The notes under the pieces: model-generated | What the model was told of the DNA's origin: nothing | The model's database searches: none | What the model saw: only the letters and a program-made list of their open reading frames with translations | Origin: Mytilus californianus | Lineage: Eukaryota | DNA: 64,000 nt | NCBI RefSeq assembly: GCF_021869535.1 | Contig: NW_026262582.1 | Span: forward strand, 57,350,001-57,414,000 | Direction of reading: 5' to 3' | In this document: positions 43,691 to 64,000 of the stretch, piece by piece | Layout of the letters: each line of letters starts with the position of its first letter | Position numbering within the stretch: position 1 is the first letter of the stretch | Program-made: the position numbers and the translations under genes

Positions 43691-45566
43691 GACCTCTATA
43701 TGCTGCCAAAGCGAGTCTAAAATAATGTATTTTCAAATTTTTCTTAAAAAGTTCGATGGAATATTCATGTCTTAGATTGCTACGAAGATTGTTCCAGAGG
43801 CTCGCAGTAGCTTGGTCGAAACTTCTTTCTCCTTAAATTTTGGTTCGTACACAAGGTTGTATTAGTCACATTGCATTTTCCGATCTAAGAGATCTTGATG
43901 GTTGATAGGCGCTAATAAGTTCCTCAAGATAGACAGGCGCTAGGCCATGTAGGATTTTGAAAGTATATAAAAGCAGTTTATATTGTATTCGGTACTGCAC
44001 CAGGATCCAATGAAGTGACACAAGAACTGGTGTAATATGATGGTGTTTCTTGGTACATGTAACGAGCCTAGCTGCCGTATTCTGTACTCGCTGTAACTTA
44101 TTGACTAAACTAGCATTTAGTTCATGTAGCAGAGCGTTTCCGTAGTCTAGACGTGACGTGACAAACGAACAGACTAAAGTTTTACAGGCATCCTCAGTGA
44201 TATATTGCCGAATTCGACCAATGTTCCGAATTTTGATGTAGCACGACTTCGCGACAGCATTGACTTGCTTTTCCATGCTCAATGTCCTATCAAAATAAAC
44301 ACCAAAGTTTTTGACCACAGATGCATTGCTAACTATTGATCCATCAAATGACAGATGACAATTCGAAAATTCCTTCACACGAGTTTTTGGTGTAAATTAT
44401 ATCAGTTCCGTTTTGTCTTGGTTCAGTTTCAGCATGTTTAAGCACATCCATTTACTAATGTCAGCTAAACAAGTCTCTAGACTTGTGTAGATATGTTGTC
44501 CCAATTATCGAGTGGTTTGATAACTAGGTAGACTTGAGTGTCATCAGCATATCTATGATAGTTAAAGTTGTGACGCCGACATATTTCACTGATCGGATTT
44601 GTAAAAATACAATACAAGCGGGGGTCCCAAGACCGAACCTTGCGGAACGCCATATTTAATGTTTATTACATCTGACAATATGGAACCAATTGCAACACGT
44701 TGAGTTCGACTATCAAGATAGGATCTCATCCACGACAGCGCTGATCCAGTTATGCTGTAAGAGTATTCTAACCGATTGATCAGGATGGGATGGTCGATAG
44801 TGTCGAATGCAGCGGATAGATCCAGCATAACAAGTACCGCACAACAGTTATTATCGAGTGCCAATGCTATATCATGGTGGACCCTTAGTAGAGCTGTTTC
44901 TGTTGAATTACAAGCACGATATGCTGACTGCATGTTGTCGAAAAGTGAGTTTGCTTCAAGATGCTGTTCGAACCGAGTTTCACTCACCTTTTCTAGGATC
45001 TTTGACGTAAAAGGCAAGTTCGAAACGGGACGATAGTTTTTTTTATCTCATCAACGTCAAGACCAGGTTTTTTTTCAACAAAGGTCTTAAAATTGCCCTT
45101 ATAAAATGCTGGAACATGCGATTCTGCCATTGAAGTGTTTACTATCTTGGTTATGATATGTGGTAAGCTGTCGAGGCATGATTTTAAGAGGTAAGTAGGA
45201 ATTGGGTCGAGTTCGCATGACTTTACCGGAGCTCTCTTGGTTATCTTTCGTACTTGTGACGAACATGTGACGCTGGTGAAAGCAAAGTTAGCGGATTTCC
45301 AACGAATTTTACATCGGCTTTAAGGGCATCATCAATTTCTGTTAATGGGTTGTTCGATTTACTCAGATTGTTCCGAATTGTGTCTATTTTTCCAACGAAG
45401 AATTCACCAAATCTATTGGATAATGCATGTTCGTTCTAATGTGATGGTAATATAGTTTCTGCTTTATTTCCCATGAGATTGTTCGTAAGTTTATGCAGTT
45501 GTTTTTGGTCGTTTCCAATTTCTAGTTTTTTGTTAGAAAAGTACTCATTTTTACATTTCAAGAGAA

Positions 45567-50251: not shown

Positions 50252-51005
50252 TTTAGTTCATTTATATGTTTTGGAGTTTAGTGTGACGTCCATTTTCACG
50301 GAACTAGTACACAATTTTATTTAGGGCCAGCTGAGGACCACCTCCGGGTGCGGGTTTTTCTCGCTGCGTTGAAGACCCATTGGCATCCTTCGGCTGTTTT
50401 CTGCTCTTTGGTCGGGTTGTTTTCTCTTTGACACATTCCCCATATGTTTAACCCCGCCGCATTTTTGCGCCTGTCCCAAGTCAGGAGCGTCTGGCCTTTG
50501 TTAGTCTTGTATGTTTTTTAATTTTAGTTCATTTATATGTTTTGGAGTTTAGTGTGACGTCCATTTTCACGGAACTAGTACACAATTTTATTTAGGGGCA
50601 GCTGAGGACCACCTCCGGGTGCGGGTTTTTCTCGCTGCGTTGAAGACCCATTGGCATCCTTCGGCTGTTTTCTGCTCTTTGGTCGGGTTGTTTTCTCTTT
50701 GACACATTCCCCATATGTTTAACCCCGCCGCATTTTTGCGCCTGTCCCAAGTCAGGAGCGTCTGGCCTTTGTTAGTCTTGTATGTTTTTTTAATTTTAGT
50801 TCATTTATATGTTTTGGAGTTTAGTGTGACGTCCATTTTCACGGAACTAGTACACAATTTTATTTAGGGGCAGCTGAGGACCACCTCCGGGTGCGGGTTT
50901 TTCTCGCTGCGTTGAAGACCCATTGGCATCCTTCGGCTGTTTTCTGCTCTTTGGTCGGGTTGTTTTCTCTTTGACACATTCCCCATTTCCATTCTCAATT
51001 TTATT
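50252..51005 (+). repeat. Head-to-tail array (~2.75 x 271-272 bp) of the family B tail
   Basis: Units start at 50252, 50523 and 50795 and are near-identical. Confidence 0.95.
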
Positions 51006-51859
51006 TCTTTTGACATCAAAAATTATTAATGAATTCCATGAATTATGATACTGGTAATTCAAATGAAAAAAATATCTGACTTTTCTAATTAGGGTTCAGA
51101 AGAATGGAGAAAACAACTATTGTTAAAAAGATTATTGTTGATTCAATTACTCAATAGAAAAATTTAATCACGGTGAAAATTAAATATTTATTGAAGGAAT
51201 TCCGGGAACGTCAATTTCATTAAACCGCGTGAAAAGTTTCTAATTAATGTTTAGAAAATGTTTTATAGGATTACTTTTGCTGTTAAGAATCTTTCCACTT
51301 ATTACGTATATTATACGGATTTCATAAAACTTCATCTAAAAAACGTTAATGAGCAATTTAAAATTATGGATCGAGTTTGGAAGATATTATAAAGGAAAAG
51401 TTCGCAACGGGCCTCGTGAGATAAATGTGTATTGTAATATTCGATAACCAACAGACCCTAGGGAATGATATGCTCTTGTGCTGTTGTGTAAGTTTTAGGA
51501 CTGGGATTGATATGAGATGTGCCATATAAACTTCCTTATGACATTCTTTTAGTATATCCCCAAAAATGTTTATCGTTCTTTTTCGTTTTTAACACATCAT
51601 ATTTCAGAGCTTTAGGAGTAAGTCGGAACGGCAATGTATGACAAACTGTTTACTGGCAACAATGAATCCACGTTAATCACAGAAAACATTGTGTATGAAA
51701 ATACCTTTCCATGTTCCTTATCTAATATAAAGGAGAACTAAGTGTTATTGAACTTTTCACAACTCGTTACCATGGTAACAATAAATGAATGTTATTGTCC
51801 GTATTTGATTATCGGCTCTTCTGGTCATACGAACACATTAACGGACATATAATACATAT

Positions 51860-52902
51860 ATAATGTCTGAAGTGACGTTTTGGATTTCAATGAACGTAAT
51901 CTATGTATTACTGGTAAACTACAAAGTCAAGAATTTAGATTCCACAAATCACTTTAAAACATTTACTTAATTCTTTCGTAGATACAAAGATCTGCTTTGG
52001 AAGTTTGGCTGTACCTGTAGAATCTTTTTACAAACGGGAAAGCATATCCTGACCTTTACGGTGATGTTGTTTACCGAGCCCGTAAATTTAAATACGATCC
52101 GTGTAAACTTGTTGATCCTTTAGATAAACTTGTTCTAAATGGATACCAATGCAACACTGTAATTAGATCTTTTATATAGTTTTATCGGTATAAATAGTGA
52201 TTTTATCATCAATAGATTAAACCCAACTAAATATTATTGTTATACACGTTATGTACATTCACGGTTATACAATCTGTCGATACCGTGTGTTGTGTTTTTT
52301 TTTTTGGCATTGCACAAGGTCCTGTTTTTCTCCGACTGTTAATGACGTCTATACACTAAATCCATTGGATGTTGGATGTGTACTGTTACCTATTCTGACA
52401 TCGGACTCGGACTTCTTTTAAACTGAGTTTTACTGTGCGTATTACTATGTGTTTCTTTATTATACATTGGCTAGAGGTATTAGGGGGTGAGATCTCACAA
52501 AATATGTTTAACCCCGCCGCATTTTTGCGCCTGTCCCAAGTCAGGAGCCTCTGGCCTTTGTTAGTCTTGTATGTTTTTTAATTTTAGTTCATTTATATGT
52601 TTTGGAGTTTAGTGTGACGTCCATTTTCACGGAATTAGTACACAATTTTATTTAGGGGCCAGCTGAGGACCACCTCCGGGTGCGGGATTTTCTCGCTGCG
52701 TTGAAGACCCATTGGCATCCTTCGGCTGTTGTCTGTTCTTTGGTCGGGTTGTTGTCTCTATGACATATTCCCCATTTCCATTCTCAATTTTATGATAGAT
52801 ATTTTAGTCTTAATTGTTGTTATTGGTTTTGAACTAGCTTTCAGTAACTGGGAGTACTCTCAGATCTGTACTTTTTATGCTCTGTATTGATCTGATGAGT
52901 AA
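51860..52902 (+). mobile_element. Penelope family C RT thumb plus 3'UTR, interrupted by a family B tail (52386-52793)
   Basis: DFNERNLCITGKL..RRYKDLLWKFGCTCRI..YGDVVYRARKFKYDPCKL; the C tail resumes at about 52794. Confidence 0.85.
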
Positions 52903-53594: not shown

Positions 53595-55020
53595 ATAATT
53601 ATAGGTTATCGTTGGTCATCTCAACGAGATTGATATTCTCGCTTGAGCCGGTATGGCGAAAGTGAGAAAAGCAATCGAGTTGAGATGACCAATGATAATC
53701 TGTTTATCGCTATTTTACCTATGACGACGTTGTTAATTTCATTGACAACGGCACGTGCGCCATTAGTTTCTAGCGATAATTTTTCATATCACTCTACTGT
53801 GCTGAAAAAGGAAATTATCAGTCAACTAGATCAAAGGAAAATTTCGTAAAATAGCGATAATTAATGTAAATGTCGATTTCTAAATCATTTATACATCCAC
53901 AAGAAATAGTTCTCAAATCATATCTTAATTTCTGATGAGCAAAGCTGCAGAAATCGCATTATAATATCATTCACACTTCAACATACTTTTTGTTCATGCT
54001 ATATTTGCATTTTTAGCTAATTAAGTTAAAAATCGATTTGCCTATTTTTTTTCAATCTAAATTGTCTGCAATATATTCAGCGGTTTCAACTTCTTGATTT
54101 CACAAGCGAATGATAATGTCTGGTTTTTGGGCCATCTGACGGATTGTATAAAGAATTCCTTCTTTCCAATGCCGTTTTGTGTGAAATATATCCTTTCGAA
54201 CTTATAATAATACATGCGTATCGCTCACATTTTCACTACTTCCTTTCGTTATTTAGGATCGCCAAACGGATTTGATTTCTTTTCGGATAAACTGTTTTTA
54301 CTTTTAAATAATAATAATAAAAATAATAATATCTTTATTTAGAGAGAGTAACTCATTTGGATTACACCAATTTTCGATAAGGCTCTCTTAATACAATATT
54401 ATTACATTAAAAATTAAACGATACAAATTCAATAATAATGATAAATAAAGATGCAATACAATTTAAATTCGATAATTATAGATTATCGTTGATCATCTCA
54501 ACGAGATTGATTTTCTCGCTTGAGCCGGTACGGCGAAAGCGAGAAAAGCAATCGAATTGAGATGACCAATGATAATCTGTTTATCGCTATTTTACCTATG
54601 ACGACGTTGTCAATTTCATGTCAATTTCATTAGCAACGGCACGTGCCCCCTTAGTTTCTAGCGATTATTTTTATATCACTCGACTCCGCTGAGAAAGGAA
54701 ATTATCAGTCAGTAAGATCATAGGAAATTTTCGTAAAAAAGCGATAAACAATTATTATCGCTATTTTAGGAAATTTTCCATTGATCTTACTGACTGATAA
54801 TTTCCTATCTCAGCACAGTAGAGTGGTATGAAAAATTATCGCTAGAAACTAATGGCGCACGTGCCGTTGTCAATGAAATTAACAACGTCGTCATAGGTAA
54901 AATAGCGATAAACAGATTATCATTGGTCATCTCAACTCGATTGCTTTTCTCACTTTCGCCGTACCGGCTCAAGCGAGAAAATCAATCTCGTTGAGATGAT
55001 CAACGATAATCTATAATTAT
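53595..55020. mobile_element. Foldback MITE complex: three ~270-bp arms (53595-53862 +, 54472-54747 +, 54754-55020 -)
   Basis: Arms align over their whole length; 54472-55020 is a ~550-bp hairpin with a ~6-nt loop. Confidence 0.92.
54305..54470 (-). mobile_element. LINE (L2/CR1-like) 3' tail inside the MITE
   Basis: Minus strand ends ...ctctctctaaataaagat(att)n. Confidence 0.45.
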
Positions 55021-55777: not shown

Positions 55778-57140
55778 AAGGGACATTCTATTATTAATGT
55801 TAGAAAATTGATGTTTTAATAAGAGGAACTTAGGTAATGTTTTAGTGTGGAGACAATTCTAGCGAAGTCAAAATCTGCCTGGTATGGAAGCGTTGTTTCT
55901 TCAATAACAATCAAAAGTATCGTGAAAAACACATAGAACTTAAAGTTAGAAAGTCAGTCAGATGTAGAAATTTATTGAGAGGATATAACCAAAAGATTGC
56001 CACATTTACAAGGAATAACCACAAGATTGAAAGGCAAAATCCCCCTTTTTTATTTTGTTGTTTTTGTTGAAAATTAATAGTAAATTTTCTTTCTATACTA
56101 ACTTAGTTCCCTTATTTGATGTGAACTTACTCTTATCTATGCAATCTTATATACGTGCTGCACCTCTATTCTTATATATATATAGAGAGAGATATAGGAA
56201 TAGAGGGACGTATAAACTATTCAATTTGTAATTGTAATATTGTATGGATAAGAACAAGAACATATCTAATTAAGGAAAATTAGTTGAATTATTCTATTAA
56301 GTTCAATAAAGAAAAATCTGTAACCAACATAAAAAAGAAAAAAGAAAAAAAAAGGAAAAAAAGGGTCCATGTCACAAACGCCTATGGTCAAATCATGCGG
56401 AATACGCTTTAAAAGCTTGGCAATTATTTTCTTCTTTGAAAAGCTTTACTAAACACTGTAATACAAATATTTTATTATCATATAATTCTTTAATATTGTA
56501 CTGTCAAAACTGTGTTGTGACCTAGGTCTGCAGCAATATAAATGCTGAAAGAAAGACAACTCTGTTGTTCCATTCTAATTTGTCTCAGTTTTTTTTGGCA
56601 CAGAACTTGTAAAATGTAGAGAGGATACAAGACTGTTACATGTACTAGTCTCAATGTTTTTAGCATAAAAAAAATATGAAAATAATTTCAGCGCCTGCCT
56701 ATTGACTAGAAATAAAATTATAGTGGATTTCAGTTAGTTTTCATATGGTATTTTGATAAGTATTTTGAAACTACTTACCATATTAACTCGAGCTGTCCTT
56801 CTGTCGTGCTGAACAGGATATTTTCTTTTTTTATAATCATCATATTTTTTTCTTTCTTTCGAAAGATTTGTCATATTAATCGTATTAATTTTATATCTAT
56901 AATGTACGTGCTACGTCACAGTGCCACGAAATTGTAATTTAAGCATTCTGCTACCTTCATATTATATGTCTTCCTGAACATGACTGAATTAGAGGGGGAA
57001 AAGTCTAGGTGATTGAAAAGATACACAAGGATATTCGTGTCAAAATTGGATGGGGGTATATTATAGGATATATAGATTTCAAGATAAATTTCAATATGTA
57101 TTGACAATAATATGATAGACTTGTTGTTAATAAATTGTAA

Positions 57141-57146
57141 TATAAA
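57141..57146 (+). promoter_or_regulatory. Possible TATA box of the peptide gene
   Basis: TATAAA about 190 nt upstream of the ATG; weak evidence in AT-rich DNA. Confidence 0.25.
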
Positions 57147-57333
57147 GATTAACGAAATTAAAACATGTAGGTCCCCTATACTGAAATTTCATATAATACA
57201 AACAAATTTGTTTCCGTCTTTCAATGTCATGGAAATCCGTTTATAACAATTCACCTTAATGTGACATGTGACGACAGATGTTATTTAAGCCAGGTAAGTA
57301 CGTGTAATGTACATTCGTGTATATCTTAACACA

Positions 57334-57385
57334 ATGGATGGTTTATTCGTAGTGTTAATATGGATGATTTGTCTAATTCCAGCTA
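57334..57385 (+). CDS. Exon 1 (signal peptide) of a small secreted 8-Cys peptide gene
   Basis: acaATGg start context; encodes MDGLFVVLIWMICLIPA plus 1 nt (hydrophobic, signal-like); ends at donor A|GTAAGT (57386) in phase 1, matching the phase of the next exon. Confidence 0.75.
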
Positions 57386-57794
57386 GTAAGTTGTGTAAAC
57401 TTATTTTATTGACTGGGGGTCTGGTTTATCCGATTGGTTAAAGTGTATTTTTCTGTAATCTTTTATTTTGTTATATTGTGTTTTGTGTTTACCTGAAAAT
57501 AATTGGTTGAATAAGGAAATAAAATTGTTTTTAACTAAAGATTTTTTTTTAAATTTCAATAAATGTGATGATGTTGTTGTTAATTGTAATTTGTACGTTA
57601 CTTTGCCTTTGACCCTCTTATGGGTGTAATTTGTGCCTAATGAAGTTTATAATAATCGGATCAAAGTCTTGTTTTCTTTTGTATGACTTAAGACCTTGGA
57701 GCTTATTCAAAAACATCCGTTAACGCACCCATTAAGATCTCCGTTAAGTTTCCATTAATCAAATTTAATTCGTATTCACAAATTCTTAGTTTTT

Positions 57795-58260
57795 TAAGGG
57801 CATGCGATACAGTTTCGATCTCATTTTATCGATTTGTGAGGAAATTTTAATACAAGCTATTTTTCATCTAAACTATTCAAATATGTAATAAAAGAAATAC
57901 CTTCATATGCCATTTTTAGAGATAAATTTGGTCGAAATTTGAAACATATTCTAAAATTATTTTTTTTTTGTTGGTTTTTTTTTTTTTTGGGGGGGGGGGG
58001 GGGGAGGATTTCTATCCTTCGGGCAGACATACCTACAACTTTGTTGATTCAAAAGCTAAACACAAGTAGAATTTTTATAAATAAAACATTGGGAATATCT
58101 TTTTTTACATAGGTATGCTCTAATTTTCTGTAACCTTTGTTTGGAAATAATTCATTTTTATGAGATTTTCACGGTTTTAGAAAAAAAATCCATTTAATGC
58201 TGCATATCTATCTAATTAAAAAATCATTGCTAATTTGTTCATACAAATTGTGACAAATAA
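57795..58260. mobile_element. MITE fragment in intron 1
   Basis: aagggcatgcgatacagttt start recalled from a bivalve MITE; no partner TIR found. Confidence 0.35.
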
Positions 58261-58771
58261 TCTTCCTACATAATTAGACCACCTTGGTAGCGTGCTCACC
58301 TCGAGTAAGAGAAGTCGTTACCGAATATATATGATTCAGATGTGGATACTAAAAAATTCTAAAGATTCGTAAGAGTACAAACAATCTTAGTCTCTATCCT
58401 CTTGCAATCTTATTAAACTTTGTTTACCCTTTACACAAGTATTCCTCATTCCAAACTAAAAGACGAATTGAAATAATTGGTTCTGCTTTGTTTCAGTCTT
58501 TTCCTCCTGCTACTTCTCTGGCACTGGAACAATTTATACATAGCTATACCAAGGATATACGAAATTTAAGTTATATCCACCATAAATTGAATTGGATCGG
58601 GCAACAGGCCAAGCTGATGTAAACCCTCTTTGTTAGTTAATGCATACTTTTTTTAATAAGTTCCCAGTTTATGTCACAATATTTCTGCAGATAGTTTCCT
58701 TTTATTTCATATCCCTGTGTTTTAACATTTGTAAATGTTAGTTTACACATTTTTTTAACTTTGTATTTTAG

Positions 58772-58889
58772 CTATTTTTGCCCCGATTGAAGTCACATGT
58801 CCTGATGGAAGACGACCGTTGGAGTGTCATGCTCGATACAAAAACCACTGTAACAGCATGTTTTGTCAGATCAAAGAAGCGGTGTGCGA
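58772..58889 (+). CDS. Exon 2 of the small secreted 8-Cys peptide gene
   Basis: Acceptor ttttttaactttgtattttag|CT and donor GA|GTAAGT; 118 nt, phase 1 to phase 2, open: (T)IFAPIEVTCPDGRRPLECHARYKNHCNSMFCQIKEAVC(E). Confidence 0.8.
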
Positions 58890-59029
58890 GTAAGTTACAA
58901 TATCGCTTTTCTTTACATGCTTCATCTTGAAAAAAAATAATTGGAAACCGCTTACCTTCCTATGAAATTATGATTTGCTATTTAAAGCTGTTTTTCAATG
59001 GAGCGTTATTGGTGTTTTTCGATTTTCGA

Positions 59030-59536
59030 TAAGAAGGTATTTCTTGATAGATGGTTGCTGCTTACATGGAAGCTATTGCGTCAAGGGTTCAGGGTGGTAA
59101 AGTTGAAGTCATCCATTCGAATGTTTTACGGACGCATTTATGGTTTGGTTGACCATTGTTGAATATCTGTGTCACATGACAAAAAAATACATACAAAGCT
59201 GTAGATCCTCGAGTTAAGTGGGATGTTTTTAAAGCTGAAGTAAGGGACATAACCATAAAATACTGTCCTAATTTTGCCGATTGTAACATTACCGAAAGCG
59301 ACTTGTTATCATATAATACTTGCTTGAGCACACGACGGATGCCAGGTGTGGAGCAGGAACTGTTTGTCCTTCCAGAATATATGAGTTCACATCTATTTTT
59401 AATTGGCGGGGTTCGTGTTGCTCAGTTTAGAGTTTTCTATGTGATGTTTTGTTATTGTTGTTTGTCTTTTTAGCTATGAATTGTTTGTTTTATTGGACAA
59501 ACTGAATGCCACCTTGGTATCTGCTCTCTCTTTTTT
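59030..59536 (+). mobile_element. Penelope family D thumb plus tail in intron 2
   Basis: LLRQGFRVVKLKSSIRMFYGR..LVDH; D-type tail. Confidence 0.8.
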
Positions 59537-59547
59537 ATCAATTATTC

Positions 59548-59976
59548 ATAAATAATATAAGGTGTCTTCATAAATAATATAAAGTGTCTTCATAAGTAAT
59601 ATAAGGTGTCTTCATAAATAATATAAAGTGTCTTCATAAGTAATATAAGGTGTCTTCATAAATAATATAAGGTGTCTTCATAAATAATATAAGGTGTCTT
59701 CATAAATAATATAAAGTGTCTTCATAAATAATATAAGGTGTCTTCATAAATAATATAAGGTGTCTTCATAAGTTTATAAGCTACCTTCTGAAGTTTATAA
59801 TATATCTTCATAAGTTTATAAGCTACCTTCTGAAGTTTATAATATATCTTCATAAGTTTATAAGCTACCTTCTGAAGTTTATAATATATCTTCATAAGTT
59901 TATAAAATATCTTCTTAAGTTTATAAGATATCTTCTTAAGTTTATAAGATATCTCCTATAATTTATAAGATATCTT
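59548..59976. repeat. Composite minisatellite: 10 x 22 bp, 3 x 42 bp, 4 x ~21 bp
   Basis: ataaataatataaggtgtcttc x10 (59548-59767); ataagtttataagctaccttc-tgaagtttataatatatcttc x3 (59768-59893); then 21-mers. Confidence 0.95.
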
Positions 59977-60534
59977 ATATATTTAGATATTAAAAGTAAT
60001 CTTATTGAGAACATTATAAATAGATGTATCATCTTTAGGAGGGTATATGCAAAAAAATATCAACCAAAAGGAAGCAACATTTCCTGACAGGCTATCCGAA
60101 GGTAATTTGTTCTCAAAACTGTAATTTTTCGTAAATACCCCTGATGAACATGATATGTTTATTTTCACCGAATATAGATAGAAAAGACTAAATAAAACGT
60201 TGAAATTTAATTCGGTTATTATTTCCCTATCAAAACGTTGCAAACTCGATTACGTTTAATAAAGCACACAAATGCGTTTTGGCCAATTCCACGACAGATA
60301 TCTGTATGAATATATATATAGCCATATTTCAATAACATTTCATATAGGTGTTTCATTAAGATTCCACCACTGATAGAGAACAGTCACGTTGTGATTTGCA
60401 GTGGTGTGTTGTGTCCCAATAAAACGCAACATCCGGGACAACAGTATACAACAATGCTTGGGAATATTAAAAAACAACAAGAACAAAAAAGTGATTAAAA
60501 TCGTAGTTTCCTAGTTTAAGCTGTAGAATTCAAT

Positions 60535-60860
60535 TAGAGCTATTATATAATGCTTGTAGTTTAAAGGGCTGGTTGGCTTGCTTGCTTTTTTGTATAAATG
60601 TTTGTTCAAACATTGTAATTTGTAATTAAGATTGAAATCTGCAATCAATAGATAGGCGGGGCTTCAGCTTGTATACATTATACGCTGCATTATACTTAAC
60701 ATCCAATAACATTTTAGTATAATGTATACAAGCTGGAGTCTCTCCTATCCATTGATTGCAGATGTCAATCTTAATAACAATGCTTGAGCAAACATTTATA
60801 CTAACAAAGCAATCAAGCCAACCAAACATTTACACTACAAGCATTAGGAAAATAGCTCTA
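60535..60860. mobile_element. ~325-bp foldback (palindromic MITE)
   Basis: tagagctatt...aatagctcta ends; inner cagcttgtatacattatac/gtataatgtatacaagctg perfect; loop about 25 nt. Confidence 0.85.
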
Positions 60861-61169
60861 AAACATTTGATTGATTTCTTTTAGTATCTACTATTAAAAT
60901 CTATAGACTGATGGACAAATTGGCATTTTACACCCATTAGTATACCAAGTATACCAGGCCGAGAACATTTTAATACGATATGAATATAATACTGCTGCAC
61001 CATTTAAACAATTTAGACAAGTCAAAAATCTATGTATTTTTGGAAGTTGAGTCCTTACATTTAGTTATGCCTTCTTCTTTTGTCTGGAGTAAAGGTAATT
61101 AAACTTTCTGATAAAAGTCTTGTATCTTAAATCGGCAAGGATTCTGTAGGACCTATGTTTTAAGTTATG

Positions 61170-61310
61170 TTATAAACTTTAGTGCGTCCGAAGCGCTTTC
61201 CTGAATAAATCTTCATCAGTATCAAAGAAACTCAAAAATTTGATATCCAAGGATGTATGAGTAATTTAAAACGCTTCCCCAATGAATTAAGATATAGCCA
61301 AATCCATCTG
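61170..61310 (-). mobile_element. Family F terminal repeat with hammerhead variant (61184-61222)
   Basis: Minus strand: CTGATGA-agatttattcag-GAAA-gcgc-ttc-ggacgc; 5' strand of stem I lost. Confidence 0.65.
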
Positions 61311-61920
61311 ATGTCATCTTTGCCTGAGAGGTATACAGTTGTTAATAAACTTGTAAATAATTTACCAGTATTGTTAAATGAAGAAACCCACGAGGTATAT
61401 CCTTGATTTATTGATTGTTGCTTGTTTAACACCCAGAGGCAAATTTATTTCATATATATTAAGGACATTCAAGAACAAATTAACAAGTACACAAAAGGTC
61501 GATTAGGAATAGGGGCGAGAAATTTGAACTGCCACAGGAAAATCAGTGTATGTTGGATAAGGCCAGAAATGTTTCCCTGGCAACAAGCCATCTATGGACT
61601 CCTCACATATTTGTTGCAAGGATACTTTAATGCGAAGAGAGAATTACCAGGTTTTATTCTACGTCAAGGCAAAGTTTTACAAACATGTTATTTGCAACAT
61701 TTGCTATTTGATATCAAAATAGTTCGTGACAGCAGCGTTAAAGGCTGTATTTGTTTTCTTTGTTCTATTTACTTGATATTCAGTTTTTTTTTTTTTTTAT
61801 TCAGTTTCACTTTATTTTATCGACTTTACGATATTGACTCTGTGAGTCTGTGAATTAAACAGTATATAGAAAATAAGTCACTTCTCTCATGGTGTGTGTT
61901 TTTTTTTTTTTAATTTGCAG

Positions 61921-62008
61921 GATTGATCTTTGTTACACGGATTGCTGGCCACGATTTTACCTGAATGGTACAAGACTGAAGCATTCTGACTGCGGAGGAT
62001 TCTCATAA
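61921..62008 (+). CDS. Exon 3 (terminal) of the small secreted 8-Cys peptide gene
   Basis: Strong acceptor (long T-run)aatttgcag|G in phase 2; (E)IDLCYTDCWPRFYLNGTRLKHSDCGGFS*; completes an even 8-Cys array; AATAAA at 62393-62398. Confidence 0.8.
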
Positions 62009-62511
62009 AATCATGTTTAATTCTAAGTATAAAACAAACACACGATGAGCACGTAAAATGAATACAAGTGGACTGCAGCTTTCAATTCTAAGTCTTTTAC
62101 GTAAAAACAAATAATATATATTTATAAAGTATTTCTAGTGTCGATAATGCAAGCGGTTATGTTGTAACTTTAGAATTTGGCAATATTGTTTTCTTTGAGA
62201 TAAAATTGTGTTGATGATTAAACAAAATAGACTTTGACTGCTTTGTTTTTCTCTAATCATTCGGTAATTTGCTCTGTTGAATTTCGTCACAGATCTCAAA
62301 TGTTTACGTGTCGTTGATTGTCATTTAAACTAACCGTCTTCATATTTACATTGTTGTAAAACTTGATAAGAGTTCGTGACAAAAAGGTGCACAATAAATT
62401 AAAATGTACGTAATGTTTTGCAAACACAAAAAACGGGTAAAAGTTCAAAAGTTCAAAAGTTCTTGGACCAGACTTGTCTTACTAATATACATTAGGATTT
62501 ACAATTAAAGT

Positions 62512-63073
62512 CATATTGGTACATACTGGTACATATTGGTACATATTGGTACATATTGGTACACATTGGTACATATTGGTACACATTGGTACATATTGGT
62601 ACATATTGGTACATACTGGTACATATTGGTACATATTGGTACATATTGGTACACATTGGTACACATTGGTACATATTGGTACATATTGGTACATACTGAT
62701 ACATATTGGTACATACTGGTACATACTGGTACATATTGGTACATATTGGTACATACTGGTACATACTGGTACATATTGGTACATATTGGTACATACTGGT
62801 ACATACTGGTACATATTGGTACACATTGGTACACATTGGTACATATTGGTACATATTGGTACATATTGGTACACATTGGTACATATTGGTACATATTGGT
62901 ACATATTGGTACATATTGGTACATACCATATTGGTACATATTGGTACATATTGGTACATATTGGTACATATTGGTACATACTGGTACATATTGGTACATA
63001 CTGGTACATACTGGTACATATTGGTACACATTGGTACACATTGGTACATATTGGTACATATTGGTACATATTG
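62512..63073. repeat. 10-bp minisatellite (attggtacat), about 56 copies
   Basis: Direct reading; variants actggtacat and attggtacac; accounts for all six repetitive ORFs. Confidence 0.98.
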
Positions 63074-64000
63074 CAACATTTGCTATTTGCTATCAGAATA
63101 ATTTGTGACAGCAACGTTTAGGGTTGTATTTGTTTTCTTTTTTCTCTTTACTTGATATACAGTGTTTTTCTATTCTCAGCGAGTATACTCTCAGATCGGT
63201 CTCTTTGTCTTTTTTGTTGTGGGAATGTATATATGCATTCGTGAAAGTTGAGACACATCAAATCTTGCCAACATACGGGTTGATTACCATGTGTCTATGC
63301 AATCACGGAAGCTAAAACGACCTGTTTAAACAGAAATTTCGGATCAATTCTTGACAAAACTGTTAGCTTATAGCTGTTTGCCGTGGTCCATTTCTGTACA
63401 AGAAATGTAGAAATTACTTCAAATTATATTCCGGAAACTGTTTCATATATGTACTTTAAACTCTACTGAAAATTGAATTCATGATTTTTCCTTCTTCCGC
63501 GTTTTAAAAATGTCATTATGCGTTTGATGGTTCAGCTGATATATGATAAGTGTTATCCTGTTTTTGCAAGTGACTTTGTTCTTTCGTGTTATACAGAAAA
63601 TAACCTTGAAGTTAAGTCCATTTTTAATATCTAATTCTTACTACTAGGTATACACATAGAAAAGACAGGATTAGAAAATCGGGGGGGAGTGGGGTCGGGA
63701 ATTTATATATCAAAACAAGAAAACACGTTATATACGGGATAATTTAAAATGCAATATTATATAAAGTCAATGTGGATAGCATTAACATTCATAAATAAAC
63801 AATTTAATTGGTTTATGTATACTGTATATGAACAACCAAACAGACATACTGAACAAGAGTGCACACGCTGAAATGTCTCGCCTACTATACTGATAATTTT
63901 TTTTTATGTTGATAGTCCTACATATTAAGTTTTACTACAAATATCACACTAACATTTATGATCCAAGAAAATGATGTCAAGGTCAGATAAACCAAGCCGG

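What the first reader, a model, noticed from the sequence alone, without database searches (positions are those of the whole stretch)
57334..62008. Hidden three-exon gene for an 85-aa secreted 8-Cys peptide
Three exons with consensus splice sites and matching phases join to MDGLFVVLIWMICLIPATIFA-PIEVTCPDGRRPLECHARYKNHCNSMFCQIKEAVCEIDLCYTDCWPRFYLNGTRLKHSDCGGFS. The Cys spacing is C-x8-C-x7-C-x4-C-x6-C-x4-C-x3-C-x15-C, there is an NGT sequon, and net charge is near zero (8 K/R vs 8 D/E). I cannot match it to mytilin, myticin, defensin, mytimacin or mytimycin spacing. It resembles a CPDG.P...C..PC....C....A.C...C..C...FY module that I recall from larger invertebrate Cys-rich proteins, here as a stand-alone peptide. 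It may be an undescribed immune, inhibitor or shell/byssus peptide family.
Basis: partly seen in the sequence, partly recalled or inferred. Interest (0 to 1): 0.85.

Follow-up and report, generated by a model that had tools for sequence, protein, structure and literature searches.

The report
Unannotated mussel gene, secreted 8-cysteine peptide
The three predicted exons are a real, transcribed and correctly spliced mussel gene for a small secreted eight-cysteine protein with no detectable relatives; its function is still unknown.

Summary
They have GTAAGT donors, polypyrimidine-AG acceptors, a strong start context and an in-frame stop upstream.

RNA evidence supports the model. One transcript contig carries all three exons joined exactly at 57385/58772 and 58889/61921. 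Two contigs from other studies carry the second junction and run on to about 62237, 15 nt past an ATTAAA signal. Four raw stranded RNA reads cross the first junction, in the orientation expected of + strand RNA. Introns are uncovered apart from repeat-derived reads.

The precursor has a hydrophobic signal peptide (likely cut after Ala21). The mature part is 64 aa, near neutral, with 8 Cys and one NGT sequon.

No relatives were found:
- The full peptide gave no Pfam hit and no word-index homologue.
- Exon 2, scored against 1.84 billion representative proteins, gave only an 11-residue TCPDG motif in a chitin-binding mucin, in a different Cys register.
- PDB, ESM Atlas, metagenome patterns and paper text gave nothing.

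It fails the defining features of CRP-I, Kazal and CS-alpha-beta peptides, although its exon and intron-phase plan matches CRP-I genes.

It is a real orphan gene for a secreted disulfide-rich mini-protein. Its function is only inferred.

The parts
57282..57288 (+). TATA-like box TATTTAA, about 46-52 nt upstream of the ATG (inferred promoter element; the transcription start was not mapped)
   Evidence: No RNA depth in 56800-57187.
57334..57385 (+). Coding part of the first exon: Met1-Ala17 plus the first base of codon 18, i.e. most of the signal peptide. Start context is acaATGG. An in-frame TAA lies at 57295. An alternative in-frame ATG at 57307 would add 9 aa.
   Evidence: The X7 transcript contig covers 57340-57385, and four raw RNA reads cross 57385/58772.
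57386..58771 (+). Intron 1: 1386 nt, phase 1, GT..AG
   Evidence: Joint 57385->58772 'skips 1386, GT..AG' in the X7 contig and in 4 X21 reads.
58772..58889 (+). Exon 2, 118 nt: end of the signal peptide (likely cut after Ala21, so the mature peptide starts at 58783) and Cys1-Cys5 of the mature peptide
   Evidence: Covered end to end by contigs of X3, X5 and X7, with one differing letter each.
58890..61920 (+). Intron 2: 3031 nt, phase 2, GT..AG. It holds 21/22-nt tandem arrays and MITE-like inverted repeats.
   Evidence: In the X3, X5 and X7 contigs, 58889 is directly followed by 61921 (record positions 118/119 and 246/247). Repeats.
61921..62008 (+). Coding part of the last exon: Cys6-Cys8, the NGT sequon (Asn72 of the precursor) and the TAA stop
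62009..62237 (+). 3'UTR with an ATTAAA signal at 62217-62222. Transcript contigs end at 62223-62237. One allele has a 7-nt deletion at 62152.

Best explanation
This is a genuine, expressed mussel gene that is absent from the protein collections searched. It has three coding exons and a transcript of about 0.5 kb.

Shown here:
- The transcript is made from the + strand, spliced at 57385/58772 and 58889/61921, and ends about 15 nt after an ATTAAA signal.
- Its only long ORF spans all three exons.

Inferred from sequence:
- The first 21 residues (or 17) act as an ER signal peptide, split by a phase-1 intron.
- Signal peptidase releases a 64-aa peptide of about 7.4 kDa and near-neutral charge.
- Its eight cysteines form four disulfides.
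- Asn72 (NGT) may be glycosylated.
- There is no usable dibasic processing site. The only RR lies inside the Cys array and is followed by Pro. The whole domain is therefore the product.

Function, by inference only: it most likely acts outside the cell as a rigid disulfide-locked binding module, for example an inhibitor or ligand of a protein target, possibly in defence. A membrane-disrupting cationic antimicrobial peptide is less likely.

No sequence relative was found, so it is treated as an orphan, probably lineage-restricted, cysteine framework.
For: Gene model.

RNA:
- The X7 contig (410 nt) reads 57340-57385 | 58772-58889 | 61921-62166 without a break.
- The X3 (456 nt) and X5 (414 nt) contigs read 58772-58889 | 61921-62237 and 61921-62223.
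- In X21 raw stranded RNA, 4 reads with 4 different starts cross 57385/58772 (GT..AG).
- All X21 exon depth is first-mate-on-minus, which means + strand RNA in most stranded libraries.
- Most intron bins have zero depth.

Twenty runs of one organism, from 6 studies, hold exon 3 plus the 3'UTR.

Coding signal: the ORF, GC and Cys statistics given in the observation check.

Protein features: hydrophobic core with a 9-residue Kyte-Doolittle mean of about 3.2, A-x-A-like sites after residues 17 and 21, pI about 7.2, and 8 Cys all in the mature part. Start context and upstream stop.

No relatives.
Against: - No protein-level evidence exists: no mass spectrometry and no ribosome profiling.
- No orthologue or paralogue was found, so there is no test of purifying selection on the frame or on the cysteines.
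- The homology search for distant relatives was weak.
- Expression in the one raw RNA run is modest: depth 1-5 from about 6% of the run.
- Tissue and condition of the runs are hidden, so the functional reading rests on composition alone.
- The transcription start and any non-coding upstream exon were not mapped.
Confidence: 0.8

Rival explanations
1. It is a highly divergent Kazal-like serine-protease inhibitor with one extra local disulfide. Cys1-5, 2-4 and 3-6 of Kazal would map to Cys 1-7, 2-6 and 3-8 here, with an added Cys4-Cys5 loop.
For: Six of the eight Cys fit a loosened Kazal spacing: C-x8-C-x7-C-...-C-x3-C-x15-C. Only 39 of 20000 random 8-Cys placements fit it. C2-x7-C3, C4-x3-C5 and C5-x15-C6 lie within the published motif ranges (PMC4549731). 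From memory only: a Tyr sits four residues after C2, as in many Kazal reactive loops.
Against: The spacing window was widened after seeing the data. The published motif C1-X(1-7)-C2-X(5)-PVC3-X(4)-TYXNXC4-X(2-6)-C5-X(9-16)-C6 is not met: PVC and TYxNxC are absent, C1-C2 is x8, and C3-C4 is x16. No Pfam Kazal hit at E<=10. No Kazal chain among PDB hits at E<=10 for either exon piece.
Confidence: 0.12
2. It is a derived offshoot of the mussel CRP-I (knottin-like) gene family that kept the gene plan but replaced the mature domain.
For: The coding-exon plan is the same as described for MgCRP-I genes. The first coding exon encodes the first 17 residues. A phase-1 intron follows, then an exon of about 100 nt (118 nt here) covering the signal cleavage site, then a phase-2 intron, then a last exon with the C-terminal part and the 3'UTR (PMC4558851).
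Against: The defining C-C-CC-C-C array in the last exon is absent. [quoted passage not shown] Here the Cys domain is split 5+3 across two exons and has no CC. The full-length word search returned no candidate at all, so no CRP-I protein shares three 5-residue words with it. Phase-1 introns inside signal peptides are common in secreted-protein genes (general knowledge), so the shared plan may be generic.
Confidence: 0.06
3. It is a spliced, polyadenylated transcript whose ORF is not translated, or has no selected function: a young or de novo gene, or a lncRNA with a fortuitous ORF.
For: There are no homologues anywhere and no copy elsewhere in the window. Expression is modest. The surroundings are rich in transposable elements.
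Against: The ORF spans both verified junctions (P about 0.004-0.02). The CDS is 11-15 GC points above the introns and UTR. A textbook hydrophobic leader is followed by an even number (8) of Cys, all placed after the cleavage site. The start context is strong and the ATG comes soon after a TATA-like box. The CDS differs by at most one letter across three independently assembled transcripts, while the UTR carries an indel.
Confidence: 0.1
4. It is a host-defence (antimicrobial) effector like other short Cys-rich mussel peptides, acting directly on microbes.
For: Mussels carry many lineage-restricted secreted Cys-rich defence peptide families with similar gene sizes and precursor logic (PMC4558851, PMC5577615, PMC10138031).
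Against: The mature peptide has net charge about 0 (pI about 7.2) and no anionic pro-region or dibasic cleavage site. Described mussel AMPs and CRP-I peptides are basic (PMC4558851). Its array differs from the CS-alpha-beta pattern. No expression data under infection were available.
Confidence: 0.2

Closest known systems
Mytilus CRP-I (MgCRP-I) knottin-like peptide genes
   Same: Both are short secreted Cys-rich mussel peptides. [quoted passage not shown]
   Different: CRP-I has six Cys as C-C-CC-C-C, all in the last exon, a conserved pro-region ending in KR/RR, and basic mature peptides of 25-38 aa. Here there are eight Cys with no CC, split over two exons, no pro-region, and a neutral 64-aa product. 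No sequence similarity was detected.
Kazal-type serine protease inhibitor domain
   Same: Both are small secreted disulfide-rich domains. Six of the eight Cys can be laid on C-x(n)-C-x7-C...C-x3-C-x15-C.
   Different: The PVC and TYxNxC signature residues are lacking. The C3-C4 segment is 6 residues longer and holds two extra Cys. No Pfam or PDB sequence match was found.
Peritrophin-A / CBM_14 chitin-binding domain (the only database hit, P0001)
   Same: They share an 11-residue stretch: P-[IV]-E-[VM]-T-C-P-D-G (7 of 11 identical).
   Different: In P0001 the motif holds the fourth Cys of a six-Cys CBM_14 repeat. The E-value of 3.9e-4 comes from five repeats of the same short stretch. The mussel peptide has no CBM_14 match and a different Cys spacing.
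Mussel CS-alpha-beta type peptides (defensin MGD, mytilin, myticin)
   Same: They also have eight Cys, a signal peptide and short multi-exon genes in the same animals.
   Different: There is no CxxxC...CxC core. The peptide is neutral rather than cationic and has no C-terminal anionic extension.

Membership tests
CRP-I (Mytilus) | Cysteine array C(X3-6)C(X1-7)CC(X3-4)C(X3-5)C in the last exon (PMC4558851) | tested here: not met
   The regex test was negative. There is no CC, and the Cys are split 5+3 across exons 2 and 3.
CRP-I (Mytilus) | Conserved pre-pro region with a dibasic convertase site before the mature peptide | tested here: not met
   There is no pro-region: Cys1 comes 6 residues after the predicted signal cut. 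The only RR lies between Cys1 and Cys2 and is followed by Pro. The word search returned no candidate at all.
CRP-I (Mytilus) | Gene plan: 17 aa / phase-1 intron / exon of about 100 nt / phase-2 intron / last exon, plus a non-coding first exon | tested here: inconclusive
   The coding part of the plan is met exactly. A non-coding upstream exon was not seen: there was no RNA depth in 56800-57187, and the transcription start was not mapped.
Kazal-type inhibitor | Motif C1-X(1-7)-C2-X(5)-PVC3-X(4)-TYXNXC4-X(2-6)-C5-X(9-16)-C6 (PMC4549731) | tested here: not met
   PVC and TYxNxC are absent, C1-C2 is x8 and C3-C4 is x16. Only a loosened spacing fits.
Kazal-type inhibitor | Match to Pfam Kazal profiles or to solved Kazal chains | tested here: not met
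   Pfam gave 0 families at E<=10 for the full peptide. The PDB phmmer search of the exon pieces gave no Kazal chain. HMMER filters hide matches weaker than about E 0.1.
Kazal-type inhibitor | Disulfides 1-5, 2-4, 3-6 and the Kazal fold | not testable with these tools
Peritrophin-A (CBM_14) | Six-Cys chitin-binding domain recognised by PF01607 | tested here: not met
   There is no Pfam hit. Similarity to P0001 is limited to 11 residues.
CS-alpha-beta defensin-like peptides | CxxxC in a helix paired with CxC in a strand | tested here: not met
   There is no CxC after the CxxxC.
Secreted protein (classical pathway) | N-terminal hydrophobic signal peptide with small residues at -3/-1 | tested here: met
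   The Kyte-Doolittle 9-mer mean is up to 3.2 over residues 4-12. I-F-A|P (after residue 21) and I-P-A|T (after residue 17) fit the -3/-1 rule. This was a rule-based check only; no SignalP was available.

The most novel reading that the evidence does not exclude
The peptide is the founding, so far single-copy, member of an undescribed disulfide-rich scaffold restricted to this mussel lineage. It may be of recent origin, and it would have its own fold and a new extracellular target.
Probability: 0.3. Interest if true: 0.65.

Novelty: new variant of a known kind. Interest (0 to 1): 0.45.

Why it matters
Mussels are known for large, fast-evolving repertoires of short secreted cysteine-rich peptides. 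Family discovery there has relied on manual annotation (PMC10138031). This locus is a concrete case:
- It is an expressed gene that is absent from a collection of about 15 billion proteins (represented by 1.84 billion sequences in the exhaustive search).
- Its eight-cysteine framework fits no named family.

If its fold and target prove new, it adds a scaffold for peptide discovery (inhibitor, ligand or defence molecule). It would also be an example of orphan-gene birth in a genome rich in transposable elements. If it turns out to be a divergent Kazal or CRP-I relative, it documents how far such families can drift while keeping their gene plan.

Tried and rejected
- **Full-length spliced peptide.** Pfam gave 0 families and the word-index homologue search gave no candidate. 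I complied. There was therefore no structure prediction, no fold search and no full-length exhaustive search. Only exon pieces by reference were used afterwards.
- **Exon 2 (40 aa), exhaustive phmmer.** It gave one hit, a CBM_14 mucin. I rejected it as an 11-residue motif repeated five times.
- **ESM Atlas, exon 2.** No usable hit.
- **PDB search.** Only chance-level hits: eS27 at E 1.2 and complement receptor 2 at E 0.5.
- **Metagenome contigs.** Two back-translated motif scans found 0 matches.
- **Paper full text.** A search for 'CPDGRRP' found 0 papers.
- **The scan's own notes.** A sequence look-up gave nothing.
- **Paralogues in the window.** tblastn found none.
- **Surroundings.** Rfam and tRNA scans of 50-64 kb found nothing. 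The sigma-70 promoter scan is irrelevant for an animal gene and was at chance level.
- **Kazal profile test.** I dropped it because memory sequences are unreliable and the Pfam Kazal profiles had already failed.
Full report
**1. Observation**

Reading the window at the stated coordinates and joining 57334-57385, 58772-58889 and 61921-62008 by script gives a 258-nt frame.
- Both donors are GTAAGT.
- Both acceptors are AG after a pyrimidine-rich tract (tttgtattttAG and a T-rich tract ending in ttgcAG).
- Intron 1 is phase 1 and intron 2 is phase 2.
- The start context is acaATGG.
- The first in-frame upstream stop is TAA at 57295, and no AG lies between 57298 and the ATG.
- The reading frame therefore starts at 57334 or, if transcription starts further upstream, at the in-frame ATG 57307, which would add 9 residues.
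- A TATTTAA box lies at 57282.

**2. Is it transcribed and spliced as claimed?**

Yes. Twenty public runs of one organism, from six studies, hold the last exon plus its 3'UTR. I laid four runs from four studies on 56800-62600.
- A 410-nt contig of run X7 reads 57340-57385, 58772-58889 and 61921-62166 as one uninterrupted record. This contains both predicted junctions to the base.
- A 456-nt contig of X3 and a 414-nt contig of X5 read 58772-58889 directly followed by 61921-62237 and 61921-62223.
- In the raw, stranded RNA run X21 (about 6% of the run was read), four reads with four different starts cross 57385/58772 (GT..AG). All exon depth is on 'first mate on minus', which in most stranded libraries means RNA of the + strand.
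- Most intron bins have zero depth. The covered bins are repeats, matched at only 90-95% identity.
- The 58889/61921 joint is not in the tool's joint table. The tool says it dropped one joint row for X21 at skipped repeats, and it notes for X3 that reads seem cut at the T-run 61773-61919 next to that joint. The joint is explicit in the contig piece table.
- Transcript contigs end at 62223-62237, 15 nt after ATTAAA at 62217.
- One allele (X5) lacks 7 nt at 62152 in the 3'UTR. The coding exons differ from the window by at most one letter per contig.

**3. Is the ORF coding?**

Several independent signals say so.
- In the RNA-verified transcript model (508 nt), the 85-codon ORF is the longest.
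- An ORF this long arises in 21 of 5000 shuffles and in 433 of 20000 random three-piece joins of window DNA.
- CDS GC is 0.42, against 0.30 and 0.31 in the introns, 0.27 in the 3'UTR and 0.33 in the window.
- Eight Cys in 64 codons has P = 0.002 from window background.

The protein features fit a secreted peptide.
- The N-terminus has a strongly hydrophobic core, with a Kyte-Doolittle 9-mer mean up to 3.2.
- Two sites fit the -3/-1 rule: after Ala17 and after Ala21.
- All eight Cys of the array lie downstream of both.
- The mature 64-aa peptide is 7.4 kDa, with pI about 7.2, 8 K/R, 8 D/E and 3 His.
- Its Cys spacing is 8-7-4-6-4-3-15, and it has one NGT sequon (Asn72 of the precursor).
- The only dibasic pair (RR) lies between Cys1 and Cys2 and is followed by Pro. 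No propeptide processing is expected.

**4. Relatives**

The full peptide gave no Pfam family at E<=10. It gave no candidate in the word-indexed 5.8-billion-cluster protein collection. That also means the protein itself is not in that collection.

From there on I used only exon pieces by reference.

Exon 2 (40 aa, five of the eight Cys) was scored against all 1.84 billion representatives. It gave one hit at E = 3.9e-4.
- The hit, P0001, is a 1274-aa protein with twelve peritrophin-A (CBM_14) stretches and Thr-rich linkers.
- The match is only PIEVTCPDGRR against PVEMTCPDGTQ, 7 of 11 identical.
- It is counted five times because the domain is repeated.
- Its Cys is the fourth of a six-Cys domain, not the first of eight.
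- I regard it as a chance motif.

Nothing came from the other searches: ESM Atlas, PDB sequence searches of both exon pieces, two back-translated motif scans of metagenome contigs, paper full text and the scan's own index. There is no second copy in the window.

**5. Comparison with known families**

*CRP-I.* MgCRP-I genes are described thus: the first coding exon encodes the first 17 residues; then comes a phase-1 intron, an exon of about 100 nt across the signal cleavage site, a phase-2 intron, and a last exon with the Cys-rich part and the 3'UTR (PMC4558851). The coding plan here is the same (17 residues, phase 1, 118 nt, phase 2). The defining features are absent, however: the C-C-CC-C-C array within the last exon, the conserved pro-region with a KR/RR site, and basic 25-38-aa mature peptides. 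No sequence similarity was detected either. Phase-1 introns inside signal peptides are common in secreted-protein genes (general knowledge). I therefore rate common descent as possible but unproven.

*Kazal.* Six of the eight Cys fit a loosened Kazal spacing that only 39 of 20000 random 8-Cys placements fit. I chose that window after seeing the data. The published motif C1-X(1-7)-C2-X(5)-PVC3-X(4)-TYXNXC4-X(2-6)-C5-X(9-16)-C6 (PMC4549731) is not met, and neither Pfam nor PDB searches see a Kazal.

*Others.* The CS-alpha-beta (CxxxC...CxC), WAP, Kunitz and CC-containing knottin patterns are not met.

**6. Surroundings**

The gene sits alone in repeat-rich DNA.
- Intron 2 carries 22-nt and 21/42-nt tandem arrays at 59545-59976 and MITE-like inverted repeats at 60548-60846.
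- A 10-nt satellite (CATATTGGTA, about 57 copies) starts 275 nt after the transcript end.
- Reverse-transcriptase debris lies at 44589-45017.
- No Rfam family or tRNA is present in 50-64 kb.
- No minus-strand gene overlaps the locus. The minus-strand RNA reads fall on repeats at 90-95% identity.

**7. Mechanism**

Shown: transcription from the + strand, splicing and the polyadenylation region.

Inferred from sequence: ER targeting, signal cleavage (most likely after Ala21), four disulfides, possible N-glycosylation, and secretion of the whole 64-aa domain.

Inferred only from composition: a neutral, rigid, disulfide-locked mini-protein is more likely to act by binding a protein target (inhibitor or ligand, possibly in defence) than as a cationic membrane-active peptide.

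None of the functional steps was tested. Tissue and condition of the RNA runs are coded and unknown to me.

**8. Verdict**

The peptide belongs to no family that I could test, and its function is open.

It is a new cysteine framework within a well-known kind, the lineage-restricted secreted Cys-rich peptides of mussels.

Earlier notes of this scan call the genome the California mussel. I did not check that.

The decisive missing steps are a fold prediction of the mature peptide and tblastn against other bivalve genomes and transcriptomes.

Noticed in passing
window 62512-63073: A 10-nt satellite (consensus CATATTGGTA, about 57 copies, 92% matches) lies directly downstream of the gene's 3' end. 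All the long 'ORFs' listed at 62482-63121 on both strands are artefacts of this array.
   Followed up: partly
window 59545-59976: Two adjoining minisatellites lie inside intron 2: a 22-nt unit x10 (95% matches), then a 21/42-nt unit x5-10.
   Followed up: no
window 60548-60846 and 59322-59515: MITE-like inverted repeats (arms 60548-60591 / 60803-60846 and 60620-60683 / 60717-60780) and a short element near 59400-59470 attract very deep RNA contig coverage (word depth up to about 1900). The matches are only 90-95% identical, so other copies of these repeats are abundantly transcribed.
   Followed up: no
window 53595-55020: A large foldback structure: 273-nt arms, 95% complementary, 880 nt apart, with nested 148-nt arms at 98%. 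It looks like a foldback or MITE-type element or a nested insertion.
   Followed up: no
window 50252-51065 and 52502-52793: A 271-nt unit in three tandem copies (99% and 78% identity), with a further partial copy 1.8 kb downstream.
   Followed up: no
window 44589-45017 (-): This ORF fragment has a reverse-transcriptase domain (RVT_1, E 5.6e-13). The neighbouring ORFs at 42-49 kb have no Pfam match. It is likely decayed retroelement sequence.
   Followed up: partly
window 57955-58014: A long T-run is followed directly by a run of G (more than 15) in intron 1. The read tool skipped it as a repeat.
   Followed up: no
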